From Camelus ferus (lineage: Eukaryota): 64,000 bases of DNA. Of this stretch, positions 19,862 to 64,000 are shown one piece after another. The notes below the pieces were generated by a model. It made no database searches, was not told the DNA's origin, and saw only the letters and a program-made list of their open reading frames with translations. Location: positions 21,700,001-21,764,000 of the forward strand of contig NC_045713.1 in the NCBI RefSeq assembly GCF_009834535.1, given 5' to 3'. The position numbers were made by a program, and so were the translations under genes. Within the stretch, counting starts at the first letter, position 1. Each line of letters begins with the position of its first letter.

Positions 19862-19952
19862 AAAAATACGGAACACTTCACGCATTTGCGTGTCATCCTT
19901 GCTAATCTCTGTACTGGTCCAGTTTTAGTGCACGTGCTGCTGAAGCAAACTC
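19862..19952 (-). pseudogene. RNU6: U6 snRNA pseudogene with two internal deletions
   Basis: Minus strand reads GAGTTTGCTTCAGCAGCACGTGCACTAAAACTGGACCAGTACAGAGATTAGCAAGGATGACACGCAAATGCGTGAAGTGTTCCGTATTTTT. It is colinear with U6 except for 3-nt and 13-nt deletions. No PSE or TATA box was recognised upstream. Confidence 0.93.
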
Positions 19953-30344: not shown

Positions 30345-30452
30345 TTTTGTTTATTTTGGCTTTTTGTGTTTTAACAGAAGAACTGGGGATTGAATCTAGG
30401 GCCTCCTGCATGCTAAGCAGGTGCTCTACCACTGAGCTATACCTACTCCCCC
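30345..30452 (-). mobile_element. tRNA-Ala-derived SINE (camelid vic-1 type)
   Basis: Minus strand GGGGGAGTAGGTATAGCTCAGTGGTAGAGCACCTGCTTAGCATGCAGGAGGCCCTAGATTCAATCCCCAG plus an A-rich tail. Pol III A and B boxes and a TTAGCAT anticodon loop are present. Confidence 0.8.
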
Positions 30453-52131: not shown

Positions 52132-55100
52132 ATGGGCCCCAGAGCAGGTGAAATGACCCTCCCTCCCCATCTCGGGAAGCAGCTCCCCAGTGGGACAGGA
52201 CCACCCTCTTTCCTCTAGTCTGCTCTTGGGGGTCCTGCCCCAGGGCTCCCCCACTGGGCGTTAGGGAAGGGAATTGAGACGGCACAGATGGGGCACTGGG
52301 CCTGGGGGTCCTGGCGGGGACAAGGCATGGATGAGGGGGACCATGGCTAGAAGGGACGGAGCTACCGAGGGGCTCAGGAGAAGATGGTAGCTGACCCCAT
52401 CCCTCTGCTTGGGGATCTTGGGGCTCAGACTGTGAGGACAGAGGGTGGAGGGAGGGGTGGAGGCAGGAGTTTACACACATGTACACCTGCCAGGGGCACA
52501 CACAGGGGTCCACACCATCCACACGTGGATGTGCCATTATAGACGTGGCATTGGTAGGCATGTATACAGGCCACAACATACATGTGCACAAGCTTCTATA
52601 GTCACATGCCACCTGCTGCACATGCCGACACATCATCACACGGGTGTGTACACAATCATACCACCAGACACACAGGCGTGCTGTGTGGGCATGCATGCCA
52701 CCACACACATACAACCCACCACATATGTGTGTTCATCACCACATACCATTAGGGGCACACGCGTACAATGTCAAAGACAGTCATCTATACAGTTAGACAC
52801 GCTGTCACACACATGTTCACCTGATCAGAAGCACACCCAGGCACATGTGCTCAGGCTCAGGCTGGCATAGACAGGTGACCAGCACCATTGTGGCAGACAC
52901 AGAGGCCCTGGGCAGACCCACACTGGATGCTCCCACACGTGCTCACAGCTTGTTCTGTTCCAGGTGCCCTGGTGAGCCCAGGCCTTGCCCTCCTGGTGTC
53001 ACTCACTGCCCACTGCTCTCCTCCCAACACCAAGGGTGCCTCCCAGGGAGGGCTGGATGCCAGCAGGGCCAACCTGTGGGCCAGGTGAGTGCAAGTTCTA
53101 AGTCGACAATCACATTTCCTGCAGCAGATTCCCTGGCAGGCCTGGGTAGGGGACAAGGAAGGACCATCTCCAGGGTCTGCGTGTGATGGCCCAGGCATGG
53201 CTGGGGCAGGGCTCTGACTCCCGGCTCCAACATGGGGGCCTGGCCCTGCCTGCCTAGGTAACTCACCAGAGATGGTTCAGGGAGGCTGGTATCCTGCACA
53301 GAGTCATGCCCACATGGCTGGCACTACTCTCCTTGGCCTGGCAGGCAATCACTTCTTGTCCTGAGGCCTTTCAGCGTCCCTTTCCCCCTCAAGCTTTGCT
53401 TCCCTCTCAGGCTCCAAACTGGGACTCTCTCCAGGGTTCTCATGCAGGGGGGTTGGAAGTTACTCATCTGCTGTGAATCAGTTGACCACTCTTCTGACTG
53501 ATCAGGCAGAGCTGGAGGCCAAGTTGGACCAGCTGAGACATGACCCCCTCCCCGTGCATGAATTGTATTAGATTCACATCATGAGGAAGGCCTGGCTGTG
53601 GGTGCCTGGCAGGTGCTCTCCAAACTCTCAGCCATCGCTGGGACCATGGAGCCCTAAACTCTGGAACCAGGCCTCAGATGAAGCGCAAACTCAGAGTCTG
53701 GACACTCTGGACTCAGGGGCCACTTTTAATCCCGCCCATGGCTTGGTGCCTGGCACCAACCAGGTACTGTCAGAGGAATGAGTGTGTGCACATGCGTGTC
53801 TGTGAAACTAGAGCCTGGCCGTCTGCAGTTCCTGTCTCACTCCCCAGTGTTGAAGAGTGATCTCCATTCTGCATGCTGCAGCCTGGAGGCCCCCAGCCTC
53901 TGCCCCTCACTGTCTGCCTCCTTTCTGCCCAGTGCCAACACCTCCCTCCTGCAAGGCTTCTGGTGCCAGCCGGCCAGCCAGCTGTCCCGGGACCAGCTTG
54001 CAGCTTTGATCAGGAGGATGGCATTGCAGCAGGTCCCCCTCAGAGCCTGGCAGGTCAGCAGCGGCACTTGCAGTGAGCACCTGGGTGTCGAGGGCAAGGG
54101 CAGACTCCCTGGAGAAGCGCCCCGGGGACAGGCAGGAGGGGAGGCATCCTTAGCAGAGGACCCAGGCCAGGACCTCAGGGCCGGGACATAGAGCAGCTCT
54201 CCTGGAGCACAGGGACCCCGCACTAGAGAACTGCATCCATTGTTTGTAGGCCAACCTGCCAATTTCACAGCCACCTAAGATGCACCTCTCAGGTCACCTG
54301 ATGGGACATGAAGTTGGCCTCTGAGGTCAGCATCTCCTTCCCTTGAGTGATTTTCCAGCACGGCCCACTTTGGGCCATTGCCAGGATTTCTCAGCCAATT
54401 GCCCACAGACTCCTGCCTCTTGCTCTGGGTTTGATGAGGGCTTGCCCACCTGGCCTCCATCTGGCACCTGGGGCAAGTTGTCCGGACTCCCAGGGGGATA
54501 TTCCAGCCTGCTAGCCTCTCCCCTACCTGGGCCACGAGAAGGGCCAGTTGAGCCCACCGGGACCTACAGCTGACACAAAGTCACCAGCCCCTGAGTTTAA
54601 AAAAAGAAAGGAAGAAAAGCTATCATTTTGTCTTGTTATAAAATTAATATAAAACTAGTAATAAATTTGAAACAACCCCAGAGTAGGCCAAGTGAGTGGG
54701 ACAAGAAGCCCAGGCGGGGTTGGCAGCGGATAAGTGGACTCCAGGAACCACTGTGGTGCCGTGGGGGCTGGGGTGGGCAGGAGCCTGATGCCGGAAGTTG
54801 GGGGCTCTCAGGCTAGGTTTGACCCATTCTGAGGCCTGTTCTGACATGGAGGTTGAGGCAAGAAGAGGAAGACATGGAGTCCAGTAACAGAGAGCCGGCA
54901 GGTGGAAAGAAGGGACAGGTGGACTTGGGGTGAGGGTGGAGAGGTGGGTGAGGGGCTTGGCCCAAGGAGGGCCCCACACTGAGGGAAGGGTGACAGGCAG
55001 AGAGGAAGGGGCTGGGTAGGCCCCAGGTGGGACGAGGGCATGACACACTGCCTGCCCTGCCCAGCTCAGCTGCCTGGCCAACCTGGCCGCCCAGCAAGGC

Positions 55101-58100
55101 CTCCAGCGTGACTTTGAGCTCCACCCGCCGGACCTGCTGCTCTTCTATGAGTGAGTGCCCCTCCCCGCCCAGCATCTGGCTGCCTGGGCTGAGCATGCTC
55201 CCAGGGGCACCTCAGTCACTTGGAGGCCCCCCAGCTGGCCCTGCCCTCCTGACAGCCCCTTACCTTCCCACAGCCTGACACAGGTGAGAGAAGCCAACTG
55301 CCGGGCCTTCATCCACCGTGCCGCCCAGGGAGACACAGAACTGCTGGCCAACCTGCCTGACCAGAGGGCCGCCCTGCAGCACAGGGCCCTGGCCTGCCTG
55401 GTAGGCGCTGTGGGCTGGCTGGGCCAGGACAGGATGGGTGATGGGCAGTGGGACCAAGCTCATGCTGACCTGCTATCCTGCAGGGAGGGCCCCGTCCACG
55501 GCTCAGTGCCTCTGACCTGCTGCTCCTCGGGGTCCTGGTGTGTGACATGGACGCATCAAGCATCATGGCCGCAGACCCCTGTGTGCTGCAGAACCTGCTG
55601 CGCTGCCCTCGGCTGACAGCCACCCAGCAGTTCGCCCTCAACAAGCTGCTGGCCAGTGGCAGGACCAAGCTCGGGTGGGTGGGGGCCTGTCCCTTCTGCC
55701 CAGGCCTCCCTTCCTTGAGATGAGAGAGGAGGCGGCCTGGAGACTGGTGTCCACAGCCCCACTGACCTCCAGCCTCTGACCCAGCTCACATCCCACCCTG
55801 ACCCTGCAGCCTACGGTGTATGGGTTTGGGGTGCTGTCCCCACCTGCTGGGCCCCGCAGTCCCCCTCCCCAGAGGCCTGGGATGGGAGAATCTCTGCTGG
55901 GCAGGCCCTGGGAGCTGTACTCAGACCTGATACAGAGCCCCCCTTTGCACGTCAGGCCCCCTGGCTCCTGGAACCTGGAGGGGCTGCAGGCTCTGGGACC
56001 TCTGGCCACCTATATCAGCCCTGGCCTGTGGATGCAGGTGCAGGAGGTAGGGCAGCGCCTCGGGGCAGGGTAGGGGCTCCAGCCGACCTTCCATCAGCCC
56101 GTCTAAGCCTGCGGGTCGGCTGTACAGACATTCTGATGCCCAAGTCGTGTCCCTGGTCACTCTCCATCACAGAGTTTCTGTCTGAGGAGAGGGAGGAGGG
56201 GACGGGTGGCTCTGGTGGCCCTCCCTAGGGTGTGGGTTCTCCAGGCCCGTCCCTCCAGGCCGTGGGCCTGGACTTCTTCGGCAGCATGGTGGCCATGTGC
56301 CGGGAGGGGCAGCTCAGCCAGCGTGATGCCAGGCGCTTTGTCACCTGCTTCCTTGAGGCCAAGGCCAAGTTGGTTTCCTCACGGTTCAAGAGGGACACAG
56401 GTCAGTGTGGCCACCATGTTTGGGGACACTGCATCTCCCCCTGCTCAGGGTCCTCATCCAGGAGTGGGGGCACCAGAGACATGGCAACCCACACTGAACC
56501 CCCTGAGCTTGGCCTAGGGGTCTTCATCCAGCCTCAGCAGAGTGGTCAGAGTCTGGTGGGGCAGGACTGGGAGTTGAGGTCAAGGTCAGGGTTGACTCAG
56601 TCTGGTCTGGGCCAAGTATTTGGCTAGGGGGTCAAGTTTGACGAGAGTCATGGGTGGGTCATGGTTAGGAGTGAAGTGGGGCCCAAAATCAGCAGCAGTT
56701 GTCAGCTCAGGCCGAGGCTGACCAGCTCGGTCCTCAACACCAGCACCCCACGCAGCCACAGGGAGAACCTGCATCCGCGGCGACATCACTGCAGCCACAC
56801 TGCAGGACAACCTCTTCCTGGTGCGCTACGACTGCTCACAGCTCGAGTCCTGCCTGGGCAACCACGTGCTCAGGGCCAACCTGGACCCCCTGCTGCAGCA
56901 CCCGCTGCCTGCCGAGTGCCAGCAAGTCGTCAAGACCAAGTTGGCTCGGGTGCGCTGGGGACCAGTGGTGGGAGGTGAGTTGGGGGCCAGCGGTGTGGCC
57001 TGACCCCCGCCCACCACTCGTTGCAGGTCTACCCGGGCGGCATCCCTGAGGAGCAGCTGCGGCTCATCCCCTCGCTGGTCTACCTCTACTCCTGTGGGGA
57101 GATCGGCCGGTGGCACATCACATCCAGGGACACAGTTGTGGCCCTGCTGGCCCCAGATGGGGCCCTGGAGAACCAGACGGAGGTGAGGGCAGTGGGGGCT
57201 CTAGGAGGCTCCACTGACTCCAGCCTTGCTGACCCCAACCCTACCCACAGGCCATCCTGCAGAAGTTCCTGGACCACAACGGCACTGTCACTGGCGCCCT
57301 GCTTGTGGCCATCGGGGGCTCCCGCCTCTGCTGGATGAGCTCCCAGCAGATCCAGGCCATCCAGCCCTCAGAGTTCCGGTAAGCCCATCCAGCAACTCAC
57401 CCTCCACAACTCTGAGCCAACTCCACTCTTTAGCCAAGGAAGGTTGGGGGACACTGAGGCTCAGGTTGGGGCCCAGGCCAGGCCATCAGAGGTAGACTCA
57501 TTTCTTTTGGCCACCATAACAAGGGGAGTGGCTACAAACAGCAGAGATGTATCCTTTCACAGTCTGGAGGCCAGAAGTCTGAAATTATGGTGTCGCAGGC
57601 CCACCTCCTTCTGAAACCTGTAGGGGATGGTCCTTCCTACCTCTTCCAGCTTCTGGTGCTGCATCACCCCCATCTCTACCTCCATCATCACATAACCATC
57701 TTCCCCATGTCTGTGTCCAAATTTCTTCTTATGACCAGTGGTTAGATTTAGGGCTCACCCGAAATCAGCATGACCTCATCTCAATTTGATTATATCTACA
57801 CATAGGAAAGACCCTATTTCCAAATAAGGTCACATTCTGAGGTTTTGGGTGGATGTGAATTTGGGGGAGACACTAGTCAGCCCAGTGCCAAGGTGAAGAG
57901 GAAAGCTGTGGTTCAGGGAGAGAGGGCCAGGCCCCATGTCCAGAGGATGAGGGGCTGCTGGCCTGCCCTCAGCCCCACACCCTCCCCCAGGCTGGCCGGC
58001 ACCCTGGATATCTCCTCCTGCCCTCAGAGCCAGAAGAACGTGCTCTACGCCAAGGCCCGAGAGGCCTTCAGCAGTGCCAGGACAGTGGCTGCCTACTACC

Positions 58101-59537
58101 GCCTCATGCGCCCCTACCTCGGTGAGACCCCGCCCTGTGTGCAACACCCCTCCTCTGGAGCCCTGCCCTCCTGCAGAGCCCTCACCACTGCCCTACCCCC
58201 AGGCGGTGCCCCGGTGGAGGAGCTGCGGCACCTGGCCCAGGCTAACGTCTCCATGGACATTGACACCTTTACCAACCTGAACCCCCGTGTGCTTCAGGTG
58301 GGCCCAGGGGCTGCCCATCAGGTGTGGGGCAGGGCTGGCCGAGCTGGGGAGCCCTAGGTCACGTCTGCAGGCCCCAATACCCCCAAATTGGAGGTGTACA
58401 GATAGTGTGGGCCCCAGGTCACTTCTCCAGGCTGGTTCTGCCAGGTCTCACCCCTGGATTGGCTAAACATTGATCCATGTCCCTCGTTCTATGGCCCCCT
58501 GGCTTCCCTTGCAGAGCCTGAGTGTGGGCAATGTGACCACACTGCTAGGCCAGAATGTAGGGGACCTGCAGAAGGCTCGCAGCCACCCGACCATCAGCTC
58601 CTGGCTCCGCAGCCTCAACCAGTCAGCCCTGGGTGAGCTGGGCCTGGACACGGACCCTACTGGCCCCACTGGCCCAGCCCACTCAACCACTGGGACCCCC
58701 AGCACCACACCCTGGATGCCCCAGCTAGCCCCCACCTCAGACCAGCCTGGGAGTGATGCCCCCAGCTCAGGTACAACTGCACCCACCCTCCCCCTCAGCA
58801 GGACATCCCCCCTCTGCCCTCTGTGCCCTGGGCCCTCTGCAGACCCCTGACTGCTACTAGCTTCTCGTCTTCACCCAATCTCATTCTCTGCTGGCCAACT
58901 CTTTCCATCTGCCTCCTCGGATGACATCTGGGTGACACTGGCTTTCCCCTGCATCACCTGCCGAGTTAGTGAAGGACACAATTGTCTCCCCCAAATCCAC
59001 AGAGCTGCAGAAGGTGGAGGGTAGGGAAGCTATGAGGTCCCTGTCTGGGCCCAAAAGAGTGGCTGTGCATGGGGGTCTTCATTGCTCTTCCCACCCACAG
59101 GGACGGTGTGAGCCTCCAGCTTAGGGCAGGGGCTGTCCAGGCCTCGGAGGCTGTGGGACAGCCTTGAGTGGGAACGGGGGGCACCCAGCAAGACTGAAGG
59201 GTGCTCCCTCCTTGTTCCACCTACAGGCAGCCCTCCAGCCCACCTTGGGTACCTGCTACTTGCCATAGCCCTGCCCTCAGGCCTCCTGTGGCTGCTGTAT
59301 TGGGGCACCCTGGAGCCTAGCTGGGACCACTCATGGGGCATCTGCACCATAGCTTCTGAAGGCAGCGCTGCCCCAGCACCACATGCAGGAAAACTGGGGC
59401 TATTAAGTGGAGCTGGACGACTACTCAGGCCAAGATACAGGCACCAGGCCCAGGGGACCTGGCCACGCCCCATGTCCTGGGGCCTACAGGGCCGGTCCCT
59501 GCCCACACCCAGCTCCCAGGACCTGGAGCCAGACTGA
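52132..59537 (+). CDS. MSLNL: Mesothelin-like protein, intact, 719 aa, 15 coding exons
   Basis: Exons: 52132-52147, 52964-53084, 53933-54053, 55065-55150, 55274-55400, 55484-55674, 55956-56046, 56259-56400, 56762-56949, 57027-57182, 57251-57378, 57991-58121, 58203-58297, 58515-58770, 59227-59537 (2160 nt, all GT-AG, no stops). Signal peptide MGPRAGALVSPGLALLVSLTAHCS; motifs LLQGFWCQPASQL, LVCDMDAS, GGAPVEELRHLAQANVSMDIDTF. The 16-nt first coding exon is the least certain part. Confidence 0.9.
57500..57880 (-). mobile_element. MLT1 (MaLR) solo LTR in MSLNL intron
   Basis: CACAGTCTGGAGGCCAGAAGTCTGAAAT; AAGACCCTATTTCCAAATAAGGTCACATTCTGAGG. Confidence 0.85.
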
Positions 59538-60086: not shown

Positions 60087-63000
60087 TCAGCTCAGGATGA
60101 AGGCCAGGAGCAGATTTGAGGTCACAGTGAGCACAGGTCCTGGTCCGAGGAGGTGGGGGCCCCCCGAGAGGGCCTCTGTGCGGAGAGGGGAAGACTCACA
60201 CCCTCCCCCTCACTCTGCCCCGACCCCACCCGCCCGGCCACCCCAGCCCACCTTGGACACTGAAGTCCAGAACCAGGTAGCCATTGGGGATGCCGCCGCG
60301 GAGCCCCAGCCCCAGGCTGTCCAGGTCATCCTGCGACTGCCGGGAGATCCAGTCCCGCACGAGGCTGTTCCCCTTCTCAGCCTTCAGGCCCACCAGGTTT
60401 GGGCCCAGAAGTTTCTGCACCTCAGCAATGGTCAGCGGCTGCCAGGGCCCCCAGACGGCAGTCAGGGTCCACTTGCCTTTCCCCAGAAGGTTGCTTTCCT
60501 CTACTGTGTCCAAACCACCCACCCTATGCCTCCCCATCCAGACCCTGCCTTGGCCCCTCCAGACTTTGGAGAGGGCCTTGGCTACCCCTCAAAAGCCCCA
60601 CCCCTAGATGCCCCCCTTCTCTGTGGTTGTACCAGCACAGCCTCTGTCTGCAGCTTCTTGAACGTGGCTAGGTCCATGTTTATGTTCTGCTGACTGAGAG
60701 CCCGCAGGTCCTCCATGGGGGCCCCACCTGCCCACGGGAGAGGGCCCCCTAAGTGTGAGAGCTTGCAACAGCCCCTAGTCTCACCCTCTGACCACAGGCT
60801 ACCAGAAGCCACTTCCTTTCCTGAGAGTTTTCCCAAAGAATTCCTTTGCCTGGTGACCACCTGACCCTCTGGGTTGGAAGAAAGGCTGGAGGTGCCCAAA
60901 ACTCACAGGATCTCAGCCTATACACACTTGGAGGGACACAGGGTACACTTTGGTCACACGGCCAACAGGCTGCCCAGTGAGGGGGGAATCTGGCAGCATG
61001 GATGCGGGAGCTTCAGGCATCACCCTCCCCTCCCCAGCCATGTCCTCCCTGGCTCACCCAGGTAGGGCTTGATATTCTCAAAGTATTCAGACCCTGTCAT
61101 GTTCTTGAAGACAATGCGGGCCTTGGGATAGAGGACGGCTATCTGCTGTGGGCTGCACGCATCCAGGTCCTGTGGCCTGGTCACCCTGGGGAGGTAGCAC
61201 AGGGCCAGGCAGTGAGCTGGGAGCGTGGCACGCCCACAATACCTGACAGAGCCCTGGACTCACCAGACAACATTGAGGCTCATGGAGCCCAGCTGCTCAG
61301 GGCTGAGAAGGCACAGGTAGGTAGGGTGGAGGGTGGCCAGGGTCTCCAGGGTGGCCTTGTCCAGCTGGCCCCCTCTCACTACATAGCGGGCAATCAGGGC
61401 AGCCACCTGTGGGAAGAGGCCACTAGGTGGCTTGGGGCAGCGAGAGATGTATCCCCTTGGACCTGCACAACCTCACATGTTGTGTCTGCCCCTCCCCACC
61501 CTGGTAGCTGGTCACCTGAGCATCCATCTTGTGTCCTTTGGTAACTTCGAGCAGAGATTTCACAGTCTCCAGGGATGTCACATTCCACTTGTGGATGTCC
61601 TCGGGGGTGACCGAAAGGAAGAAGTACCTCAGGTGCTGGATCAGGGACTCTGGGTATCCCTGTGGGTAGAACTTCCCCGGAAAGTGACCATGAGGGCCAC
61701 AGCCACTCCCCGGGCAGCTGGGAAAGCCGAGCTATGGCAGGCAAGTGGGAGCCCGAGTCCTGAACTACCTCGTCCAATTTGCGCTTAAAAATGTGGAGCT
61801 GCTGGTAGGTGAAAGGTATCAAGTTCACCCGGTCCATCTGAGCAGCCAGCAGGGCCCCATCCACACAGGCCTCCAGCTCCCACTCCTCGTAGAAGATGAG
61901 TTTTTCATCCACCACTTGGGCTTTCCGCCCCGGGGGGCAGGCCTTCTCTGCAGGGGTAGGCAGGGGGTTCGGGACTGGGCTTCTCCCATCAACCTCTTCC
62001 TCCCACACCCACGCTGAGACCCTGGGCAACACATGACCTCTCTGGGTCTCAGTTTATCCATCAGCAAAATGGGGTGTTTCTGTTCACTCTCTTGGGTCAT
62101 CATGATTGACAAGAAGGGCCGCAGGCGCAGGCAGGTGAGACATCACATGCCAGCCCCCACCCTACATCTTCTGACGCCTAATGGGGCTGGGCACTGTGCT
62201 CACTCTCTGTGCCCCGCCGGGCCCTTGGGATGATGACGGTCAGCTCAGGCTGTGGCCAGGACTGGTCCCTGGAGGTGTGCTGCAGCCATGAAGTCGTGAG
62301 GCCCTGAGAACAAAGCAGCGCTGGGACTGAGCAGAGAAGCCTGGCGCTCAAGGACCCCCACCCAGGGCCAGAAAACCCTCTTTGATTCCCCAGAGGGGCC
62401 TTACCAATCCCGTATCTGCAGCCTGGGCCCTGGAAGGTAACATCCACCCTGCAGGGGAGGGCACACCAGGCTCAAGGGATGGCCAGGGACTTCCAGCAAT
62501 GCCTGCTGCAGTCCCCCACCCTGGCGAGGAAGGAGACAAAGCTGGCCCCTCCCAGCCCCGTGCACACCCCATGGGTGTAGAAGCAGAGGGTTAGGCCCCT
62601 GCACCCCACAATATCACGTCCCGCAACACCACACCAGGGAGCACAGGCCTCCTCCTGGGGCCCTACTGCTCAGGGCAGTCAGACACCTGTCTCATGGGCA
62701 CCCTCAGTTTGGCCTGTGCCCCCATCACCACCCTGCCTCAACCTCCAACCCCGTAGGTCACCGCAGTCCAGCATGGGTGCCAGACATAGTCACCTCTCAG
62801 GGCAGAGATATGGCTGACAGCCTGCCTGGGACTTGAGGCACCTGATGAGATTCAAGACACTTGTCTGGGCTCAGGGCACCTACTTAGATTCAGAGCATCT
62901 GCCCAGGATTCGAGGCACCTGCCTAGGGCAGGGTCGGGGGGCACTGTCCACAGCCAGGGAAGGAAGCATAGAGCAGGTAGCGCCTTTCCTAAGGCCCCGA

Positions 63001-63162
63001 GCCCTAGGGACCCACAGCTACCCTTGGACACTCTCTGGCACTCCAGTATTTTGCTGCAGCTCATCGTCATTACTCACCGAGGCTGAGAAGCAGGAGCAGG
63101 AGGCTGCCATGAGTTGAGGTCCCACAGGACTCCAGTGGGGTTCGAGCAGTCTGCAAAGCCAT
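60087..63162 (-). CDS. MSLN: Mesothelin, short form lacking most of the MPF moiety, 401 aa, 10 coding exons
   Basis: Exons: 63078-63162, 62405-62448, 62204-62303, 61769-61947, 61516-61671, 61264-61406, 61058-61185, 60633-60727, 60252-60438, 60087-60175 (1206 nt, phase-consistent). Signal MALQTARTPLESCGTSTHGSLLLLLLSLGW; furin site PRARR; LIFYEEWELEACVD; GGIPNGYLVLD; GPI tail EALSGGPHLLGPGPVLTVTSNLLLAFILS*. Confidence 0.93.
62824..62925. repeat. Degenerate 19-20-nt minisatellite in the MSLN intron after the first coding exon
   Basis: About five units: GCCTGGGACTTGAGGCACCT / GATGAGATTCAAGACACTT / GTCTGGGCTCAGGGCACCT / ACTTAGATTCAGAGCATCT / GCCCAGGATTCGAGGCACCT. Confidence 0.75.
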
Positions 63163-64000
63163 GGTCTGTGGAGGACAGCCACTCTGATGTCCCCACTTCT
63201 TCCCCTCCCCACCGCTTCCCTGCACCCACGATACTGCCCCAGGCCAGTGTGGGGCCTTGTGGGGCTGCAGGGGTCTCAGGGCCCTGGAGGGCTACCAGCT
63301 CAAACCTTCACAGGCCTCCCCGGCAGCGGCAGTGTCTGTGTGTGTGGCCTCTGGCCCTCCTCTCAGGACCAACCAGCCTGCCTGGCCCGCCTCCTCCGGG
63401 AAACCTGCCCTTCTGCCAGAGGGGTCAGGTCTGAGTCAGCCTGGCCCTCAGCTGTGAGAGCCCAGGCGGGCGCCCATCCTCTCTCCCCATGGGGCAGGGC
63501 GGGAGAGTTTCGTGTGCAAGGAAGCAGGGCCTGGCTGGCCTTGGTGTCCCCACCCCAAGCAGAGGGACAGAGCAGTTTGGAGGCTGGGGGTCACGCTGAC
63601 CCCTCAACCTGCAGCATGGCCGTCCTCCCCGCCCACCCACAGCCACAGGTGCCTGGCTTTGTGTAATCCCAGGGCCCTCCTAGGTGGACGAGGCCGCCAC
63701 AGCCCACCTGCCATCCTGGTTTCCCTTCTGAGGTCCTTCCGGAAACAGAGGCCTGGACCAGTGTGAGTGGAAGGTGGGTGGGGTGCTGCTCCCTAAAGAG
63801 GGGGGCTTGCAGGAAACCGAACCACCTTCCACTCTTGCCCTCCCAGAGAGACCCAGAGTGGGAGGCCGCCTACAGCCAAGGGCAGTGGAGCCATACCCTC
63901 CCCCAAACCTTCGCCAAGGCCTGTGTCGGGCCCCACCCCAGCTCAGAAATGGGGGAGAGGCACGTTTATGTCTCAGCAACCGCTTTCAGCCAGGCAAAGA

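What the first reader, a model, noticed from the sequence alone, without database searches (positions are those of the whole stretch)
62204..62448. Mesothelin has lost the six MPF exons by a clean in-frame genomic deletion
Seen in sequence: the 44-nt second coding exon (62405-62448, GWMLPSRAQAADTGL, ends phase 0, donor GTAAGG) is separated by only a 101-nt gap-free intron (62304-62404) from the 100-nt exon that carries the furin site (GLTTSW...PRARRGTE, starts phase 0). The CDS totals 401 aa. Established knowledge: human mesothelin is ~622 aa, and six exons (~666 nt, ~222 aa, most of megakaryocyte potentiating factor) lie between these two exons. Internal control: MSLNL in this window still has homologous exons (121, 86, 127, 191, 91 nt) at that position, while shared downstream exons match in size (156 and 95 nt). 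Inference: a deletion fused two phase-0 introns. The result is a functional GPI-anchored mesothelin, with the MUC16-binding LIFYEEWELEAC segment intact, that cannot make full MPF. This may be shared by other artiodactyls rather than unique to this species; I cannot check that here.
Basis: partly seen in the sequence, partly recalled or inferred. Interest (0 to 1): 0.88.

Follow-up and report, generated by a model that had tools for sequence, protein, structure and literature searches.

The report
Camel mesothelin lacks MPF exons (known)
The camel mesothelin gene really has lost the six exons that encode most of megakaryocyte potentiating factor, but this is one ancient deletion shared by all laurasiatherian mammals and was published in 2011, so it is ordinary for this genome.

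Summary
On the minus strand, a 44-nt exon 2 (62405-62448) and the 100-nt furin-site exon (62204-62303) lie 101 nt apart with no N between them. The 10-exon CDS encodes 401 aa. RNA contigs from two studies carry the exon 2 to furin-exon junction and the other introns, and DNA contigs from two further studies span the region without a difference, so this is not an assembly collapse.

It is not special to this species. The residues match Camelus ferus RefSeq isoforms exactly. Mesothelins of about 400 aa with the same junction are annotated in camelids, ruminants, pig, hippo, whales, equids, rhino, carnivores, bats and pangolin. In yak, donkey, a bat, a seal and a pangolin the same intron of 86-107 nt aligns end to end with the camel one. 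Its 5' half matches the start of lemur and beaver intron 2, and its 3' half matches the end of their intron 8 (breakpoint about 62355/62356).

All 88 proteins found with the MPF region are from Euarchontoglires. The event is already published (Kim & Hahn 2011, Int J Mol Med 27:289, cited in PMC11417096, which confirmed it by RT-PCR in dog). The scan had also noted this same stretch once before (s1-149340).

Verdict: real, correctly interpreted, already known, low interest.

The parts
63078..63162 (-). MSLN coding exon 1 (85 nt, ATG at 63162, signal peptide)
   Evidence: donor GT; RNA joint 62447/63077 in runs X1 and X2
62405..62448 (-). MSLN exon 2 (44 nt, ends phase 0; GWMLPSRAQAADTGL)
   Evidence: same 44-nt exon in yak, donkey, bat, seal, pangolin and lemur
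62356..62404 (-). 5' half of the fused intron, derived from the start of ancestral intron 2
   Evidence: Local alignment with lemur and beaver intron 2: score 52 and 47, against a shuffle maximum of 26-28
62304..62355 (-). 3' half of the fused intron, derived from the last ~53 nt of the ancestral 74-nt intron before the furin exon; deletion breakpoint at 62355/62356 (within a few nt)
   Evidence: The alignment with lemur last-MPF-exon/intron 8/furin exon starts exactly where the intron 2 homology stops, in camel and in the bat. The intron part alone is weak (score 19 against shuffle mean 14, max 22)
62204..62303 (-). Furin-site exon (100 nt, starts phase 0)
   Evidence: RNA joint 62302/62404 in X1 and X2
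62214..62225 (-). Codons 70-73, R-A-R-R, the furin-type R-x-[KR]-R motif
   Evidence: Translation; aligns with RFRR/RLRR/RLKR of long-form mesothelins
61769..61947 (-). Exon 4 (179 nt), start of mature mesothelin, with the LIFYEEWELEAC segment (equivalents of human Y318, W321, E324)
   Evidence: these residues are named as functionally important in PMC11417096
60087..61671 (-). Exons 5-10 (61671-61516, 61406-61264, 61185-61058, 60727-60633, 60438-60252, 60175-60087 including stop), ending in a hydrophobic GPI-signal-like tail
   Evidence: every intron seen as a joint in RNA run X2
53933..56046 (+). MSLNL exons paralogous to the lost MPF exons (121, 86, 127, 191, 91 nt), used as the internal control
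   Evidence: open AG..GT exons of those sizes with MPF-like peptides; weak tblastn hits of lemur, gorilla and beaver MPF at 55062-55675

Best explanation
This is the ordinary laurasiatherian form of the mesothelin gene (MSLN) in a camel; the residues are identical to Camelus ferus RefSeq isoforms. In the stem lineage of Laurasiatheria a single deletion of about 1.9 kb removed six exons. In lemur and beaver those exons are 50, 121, 86, 130, 194 and 91 nt, 672 nt in total, and encode nearly all of megakaryocyte potentiating factor. The deletion ran from about 49 nt into intron 2 to about 53 nt before the end of intron 8. Both introns were phase 0, so the fused intron of about 100 nt splices exon 2 directly and in frame to the furin-site exon. 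The camel gene is transcribed and spliced exactly this way and evolves under moderate purifying selection. By homology (inferred, not shown) it makes a signal peptide of about 36 aa, a vestigial pro-segment of about 37 aa ending in RARR, and a normal GPI-anchored mature mesothelin.
For: Gene model and 101-nt intron. RNA junctions in two studies and gap-free DNA contigs in two more. About 400-aa mesothelins are annotated in more than 50 laurasiatherian species, against 618-654 aa in primates, rodents, lagomorphs and colugos. The same protein junction in 15 laurasiatherians. Genomic intron lengths of 107, 96, ~101, 102 and 86 nt in yak, donkey, Hipposideros, monk seal and pangolin, with no N inside. 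These introns align end to end with the camel intron. Exon structure 85/44/100/179/156/143/128/95/187 in short forms, with six extra exons in lemur and beaver. Breakpoint mapping. All 88 proteins that match the MPF region (P0063:45-290) are Euarchontoglires. No MSLN-type MPF exon elsewhere in the 64-kb window, nor within 10 kb either side of donkey MSLN. Pairwise dN/dS of the mature part is 0.38-0.43 for camel against five other orders, the same as lemur against beaver (0.43). Identity to Camelus ferus isoforms. Publication: Kim & Hahn 2011 as summarised in PMC11417096, plus dog RT-PCR there.
Against: Kim & Hahn 2011 itself is not held in the library, so I know its content only through the citing paper. 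I could not compare my breakpoint or taxon list with theirs. Eulipotyphla was not confirmed independently: in the mole locus L009 no MPF exons are detectable in 5 kb upstream, but exon 2 and the fused intron could not be aligned convincingly. No afrotherian, xenarthran or marsupial MSLN was examined. Polarity (loss rather than gain) therefore rests on the paralogous MSLNL exons and on the intron homologies. Signal-peptide, furin and GPI processing of the camel protein are inferred from homology only.
Confidence: 0.96

Rival explanations
1. Assembly collapse: the MPF exons exist in the camel genome but were dropped from this assembly.
For: None found.
Against: There is no N in the intron. DNA contigs of two separate studies span 60087-63300 with 0 differences and flat depth. 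RNA contigs of two studies splice across exactly 101 nt. Five independent assemblies of other orders have the same homologous short intron.
Confidence: 0.01
2. A recent deletion specific to camels or to artiodactyls, and therefore a new lineage-specific event.
Against: The fused intron is homologous along its whole length in a perissodactyl, a bat, a carnivore and a pangolin. The breakpoint maps to the same place in camel and bat. The event is published as laurasiatherian-wide.
Confidence: 0.01
3. The short protein is only an exon-skipping isoform, or a full-length MSLN copy lies elsewhere in the genome.
For: In tree shrew (L008) a 392-aa RefSeq model with the same junction is produced by skipping exons that are still present in the DNA, so skipping can give this product. 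An earlier scan note (s1-149017) reports a decayed stereocilin-like gene about 7 kb beyond the window end; I could not read it.
Against: In the camel there is nothing to skip: the intron is 101 nt. tblastn with three MPF sequences finds only the weak MSLNL paralogue in the window. No camelid or other laurasiatherian protein with the MPF region exists among the hits. Donkey has no MSLN-like sequence in 10 kb upstream.
Confidence: 0.02

Closest known systems
Laurasiatherian MSLN exon deletion (Kim DS, Hahn Y. Int J Mol Med 2011;27:289-93, doi 10.3892/ijmm.2010.573)
   Same: Loss of the MPF-coding exon block by joining of two introns, with mature mesothelin kept. It was reported for cow, pig, horse, panda, hedgehog and dog (as summarised in PMC11417096). 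The camel gene has the same junction and a homologous fused intron.
   Different: Nothing essential. According to the citing paper, camelids, bats and pangolin were not among the species named; they follow from the phylogeny.
Dog mesothelin (Nabeta et al. 2024, Front Vet Sci, PMC11417096)
   Same: The dog transcript (exons 5-8 amplified by RT-PCR and sequenced, matching predicted variant 2) has a deduced protein that lacks MPF but keeps the furin motif, the Y/W/E residues of the CA125-binding region and a GPI signal. The camel has RARR and LIFYEEWELEAC.
   Different: Different species. The evidence here is public RNA-seq contigs rather than RT-PCR.
Long-form MSLN of Euarchontoglires (gorilla P0063 622 aa, mouse P0118 625 aa, lemur P0106, beaver P0077)
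   Same: Orthologous locus, tail to tail with MSLNL. Exons 1-2 and everything from the furin exon onward are the same size, and the mature part is 60-69% identical.
   Different: These carry six additional exons (about 222-224 aa) that form the 31-kDa MPF released by furin. Their furin motif is invariant.
MSLNL, the neighbouring paralogue in this window
   Same: Same Pfam family (PF06060), with exon sizes of 121/86/127/191/91 nt matching the lost MPF exons.
   Different: A distant paralogue (about 30-43% identity over short stretches). It does not replace MSLN-MPF by sequence.

Membership tests
Mesothelin orthologue (MSLN, Pfam PF06060) | Sequence membership in the PF06060 mesothelin family and best matches to proteins annotated as mesothelin | tested here: met
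   top hits are mesothelins of Camelus (E 1e-255), all carrying precomputed PF06060; no mismatch to C. ferus isoforms X4 and X5.
Mesothelin orthologue (MSLN, Pfam PF06060) | Conserved synteny: tail to tail with MSLNL | tested here: met
   MSLNL-type exons on the + strand at 53933-58300, converging on the MSLN 3' end at 60087. The same arrangement is seen in loci L002-L008.
Mesothelin orthologue (MSLN, Pfam PF06060) | Furin-type R-x-[KR]-R site before the mature chain | tested here: met
   RARR at residues 70-73. Actual cleavage was not tested.
Mesothelin orthologue (MSLN, Pfam PF06060) | C-terminal GPI-anchor signal | not testable with these tools
   A hydrophobic C-terminal tail aligned with that of human and mouse is visible. 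No GPI predictor or experiment was available.
Laurasiatherian MPF-deleted MSLN allele (Kim & Hahn 2011) | Exon 2 joined directly to the furin exon, in the genome and in mRNA | tested here: met
   101-nt intron; RNA joints.
Laurasiatherian MPF-deleted MSLN allele (Kim & Hahn 2011) | The fused intron is homologous across laurasiatherian orders, indicating a single event | tested here: met
   Alignment A2 of six species from six lineages; 84% mean column identity over exon 2 + intron + furin exon, and the intron aligns end to end.
Laurasiatherian MPF-deleted MSLN allele (Kim & Hahn 2011) | The fused intron is a chimera of the 5' end of intron 2 and the 3' end of intron 8 of the long form | tested here: met
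   The 5' half is clearly significant. The 3' half is supported mainly as a continuation of the exon alignment.
Laurasiatherian MPF-deleted MSLN allele (Kim & Hahn 2011) | Present in the basal laurasiatherian order Eulipotyphla | tested here: inconclusive
   Mole locus L009: no MPF exons in 5 kb upstream and no N, but exon 2 and the intron could not be aligned. The citing paper lists hedgehog as lacking MPF.

The most novel reading that the evidence does not exclude
The deletion itself is known, but two consequences may not have been described. (1) Once MPF was gone, the furin site became dispensable. R-x-[KR]-R is invariant in every long-form mesothelin listed, but has lost its P1 or P2 basic residue repeatedly in short-form lineages: many bats RALQ, pilot whale RAQQ, pig RPQG, pangolin RACQ, with weaker RAQR, RALR and RAWR in equids, other whales, some bats and alpaca. 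Camels, ruminants, hippo, rhino and most carnivores keep it. (2) Tree shrew, a euarchontogliran, seems to have lost MPF independently. Its MPF exons are still in the DNA but carry frameshifts and stops, and the annotated transcript skips them at the same in-frame junction. Together these would argue that MPF is repeatedly dispensable in mammals.
Probability: 0.4. Interest if true: 0.3.

Novelty: already known. Interest (0 to 1): 0.08.

Why it matters
For this genome it matters little. The camel gene is what phylogeny predicts, and RefSeq already annotates it this way. The practical point is for comparative and veterinary work: MPF-based assays or reagents designed on human or mouse MSLN cannot work in camels or in any other laurasiatherian, whereas reagents aimed at mature mesothelin may. 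The natural absence of MPF from a whole superorder fits the reported normal platelet counts of Msln-knockout mice (as cited in PMC11417096) and suggests that MPF has no essential function.

Tried and rejected
tblastn with default settings missed the 44-nt and 100-nt exons in several loci. I replaced it with exact k-mer mapping of each species' own protein and a splice-aware CDS builder.

The look-up of the tree shrew protein P0078 found no record. I reached the locus through its cluster mate P0169, whose first 232 aa are unrelated mis-annotation.

Kim & Hahn 2011 is not held by DOI. Two literature searches were malformed, and a search for tree shrew plus MSLN plus pseudogene found nothing.

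The dN/dS calculation restricted to the MPF columns crashed on an empty column set and was not repeated. The dN/dS of the 36-codon vestigial pro-segment (0.25-0.47 for camel pairs, mean 0.57 over all pairs) is too noisy to interpret.

The mole locus gave no convincing alignment of exon 2 or the fused intron.

I considered and rejected assembly collapse, a camel-specific deletion and an exon-skipping isoform (see the rival explanations). I did not run structure prediction or further protein-database searches because they would not change the verdict.

Full report
**Observation.** Reading the minus strand and assembling the exons in a script gives a 10-exon mesothelin CDS. The exons are 63162-63078, 62448-62405, 62303-62204, 61947-61769, 61671-61516, 61406-61264, 61185-61058, 60727-60633, 60438-60252 and 60175-60087. 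All introns are GT-AG, and the CDS is 1206 nt, or 401 aa plus stop. Exon 2 is 44 nt and ends in phase 0. The next exon is 100 nt, starts in phase 0 and carries R-A-R-R at residues 70-73. The intron between them (62404-62304) is 101 nt and holds no N; the only N run in the window is 74-224.

**Is it real DNA and real RNA?** Public runs were found with the 3.2-kb gene region and laid on it.
- RNA contigs from two different studies (X1, X2) hold 0.47 of the sampled words, about the exonic share.
- Both RNA runs carry the joints 62302/62404 (skipping exactly 101 nt, GT..AG on the minus strand) and 62447/63077.
- Run X2 shows all nine introns of the model.
- Contigs of two runs of unlabelled library type from two further studies (X15, X17; taken as genomic DNA because they hold all sampled words, introns included, at flat depth) span the whole stretch in one piece with no difference. 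One of them may be the assembly's own source.
- Assembly collapse is therefore excluded, and the short mRNA is the expressed form.

**What it is.** A protein search with the 401-aa product returns mesothelins.
- The window's residues are identical to Camelus ferus isoforms X4 and X5 apart from isoform-specific segments. They differ by one residue from C. bactrianus and by four from C. dromedarius.
- Mesothelins of about 400 aa are annotated in alpaca, hippo, baleen and toothed whales, yak, goat, deer, musk deer, pig, peccary, donkey, rhinoceros, seals, dogs, cats, mustelids, panda, hyaena, more than fifteen bats and pangolin.
- Several unnamed Logan contigs of 1.3-1.4 kb, about the length of a short-form mRNA, also encode proteins of about 400 aa.
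- Primates, colugos, rodents and lagomorphs have 618-654 aa.
- In a protein alignment all fifteen laurasiatherians have the same gap, from just after ...AADTG to just before the W of the furin exon. Gorilla and mouse have about 222 extra residues there.

**One event or many?** I fetched genomic loci for yak, donkey, Hipposideros bat, monk seal and pangolin.
- The corresponding intron is 107, 96, about 101, 102 and 86 nt, with no N inside.
- These introns align with the camel intron from donor to acceptor.
- The exon sizes are identical: 85/44/100/179/156/143/128/95/187. The exceptions are the annotated donkey exon 4 (200 nt) and pangolin exons 1 and 5 (163 and 84 nt).
- Lemur and beaver have six further exons of 50, 121, 86, 130, 194 and 91 nt (672 nt, in frame) between the 44-nt exon (38 nt in the beaver model) and the 100-nt exon.
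- The first ~49 nt of the camel intron are clearly homologous to the start of lemur and beaver intron 2 (score 52 and 47, against a shuffle maximum of 26-28).
- Homology to the end of the 74-nt intron 8 plus the furin exon starts at the very next base, in camel and in the bat alike.
- This places the breakpoint at window 62355/62356, with no obvious microhomology. The lost segment is about 1.9 kb in lemur coordinates.
- The deletion therefore predates the split of Camelidae, Ruminantia, Perissodactyla, Chiroptera, Carnivora and Pholidota.

**Polarity and second copies.**
- A search with the MPF part of gorilla MSLN (residues 45-290) found 88 proteins, all from Euarchontoglires. None came from any laurasiatherian.
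- tblastn with lemur, gorilla and beaver MPF against the whole window hits only the paralogue MSLNL, and only weakly.
- MSLNL keeps open exons of 121, 86, 127, 191 and 91 nt with MPF-like peptides.
- In a gap-free donkey assembly there is no MSLN-like sequence within 10 kb upstream.
- The mole locus shows no MPF exons in 5 kb upstream, but its exon 2 could not be found, so Eulipotyphla is consistent but not proven here.

**Function.**
- Pairwise dN/dS of the mature region is 0.38-0.43 between camel and the five other orders. That is the same as between lemur and beaver (0.43), so the truncated gene is under the same moderate constraint as the long one.
- The segment LIFYEEWELEAC keeps the Y, W and E that PMC11417096 names as functionally important in human mesothelin.
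- By homology, the camel precursor should give a signal peptide, a pro-segment of about 37 aa ending in RARR, and GPI-anchored mature mesothelin. Processing is inferred, not shown.

**What is known.** A literature search found Nabeta et al. 2024 (PMC11417096). They amplified and sequenced exons 5-8 of dog mesothelin cDNA, matched it to a predicted database transcript, and state that the deduced dog protein lacks MPF. [quoted passage not shown] According to them, that paper showed the loss in cow, pig, horse, panda, hedgehog and dog and attributed it to non-homologous end joining of introns. The 2011 paper is not held in the library, so I rely on the citing paper's summary. My independent reconstruction agrees with it. 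The finding is thus real and correctly interpreted, but already published, and already reflected in RefSeq annotation of this very species.

**Side observations.**
- The furin motif R-x-[KR]-R is invariant in all long-form proteins listed but degraded in many short-form lineages. This is what one would expect if cleavage lost its purpose once MPF was gone. Camels keep RARR.
- Tree shrew has a 392-aa RefSeq model with the same junction, but its genome still holds MPF exons 4-8 between exon 2 and the furin exon. They carry frameshifts and in-frame stops relative to lemur and beaver. This looks like an independent loss by decay and exon skipping. It rests on one draft assembly and no RNA.
- These two points are the only parts that might be new, and they are of modest interest.

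**Earlier scan notes.** The same stretch was noted once more in this genome (s1-149340). A note on MSLNL (s1-149418) fits what I saw of its MPF-like exons. A note on a decayed stereocilin-like gene beyond the window end (s1-149017) could not be tested from this window.

Noticed in passing
L008:15413-17177 (Tupaia chinensis, GCA_000334495.1 KB320600.1): The tree shrew RefSeq model XP_006146423.1 (392 aa) splices exon 2 to the furin exon as laurasiatherians do. However, the 1.6 kb between them has no N and still holds MPF exons 4-8 with frameshifting indels and in-frame stops. This looks like an independent loss of MPF by exon decay and skipping in a euarchontogliran. It rests on one draft Illumina assembly, and no RNA was checked.
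   Followed up: partly
window 62214-62225 (-) and the aligned position in P0001-P0120: The furin motif R-x-[KR]-R is invariant in all long-form (Euarchontoglires) mesothelins. It is degraded in many short-form lineages: bats RALQ/RALL, pilot whale RAQQ, pig RPQG, pangolin RACQ, and equids, other whales and alpaca RAQR/RTQR/RAWR. It is kept in camels, ruminants, hippo, rhino and most carnivores.
   Followed up: partly
window 61671-62204 (-): RNA run X1 has a low-depth contig joining 61671 directly to 62204. This skips the 179-nt exon 4, which would shift the frame. It is probably a minor aberrant splice product.
   Followed up: no
window 61406-61430 and 61659-61671 (-): Camel RefSeq isoforms differ from the RNA-supported model by alternative acceptors: an 8-aa insertion PPSGLFPQ before exon 6, and loss of FYPQ or of 24 aa at exon 5. 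The RNA contigs of X2 support the 401-aa form.
   Followed up: partly
window 19862-19948 (-) and 30375-30446 (-): Rfam gathering-level matches to U6 snRNA (45.5 bits, just above the cut-off of 44) and to tRNA (43.5 bits). In a mammal these are likely a U6 copy or pseudogene and a tRNA gene or tRNA-derived SINE.
   Followed up: no
L009:1-5000 (Talpa occidentalis): The mole MSLN model is partial and starts inside the furin exon. No MPF exon is detectable in 5 kb upstream, and exon 2 was not found, so the 5' end of the gene may be further diverged or degraded in moles.
   Followed up: partly
beyond the window end (about 6.8 kb past 64000): An earlier scan note (s1-149017) reports a decayed stereocilin-like gene upstream of MSLN. 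It cannot be read from this window. In donkey (L010) nothing MSLN-like lies within 10 kb upstream.
   Followed up: no
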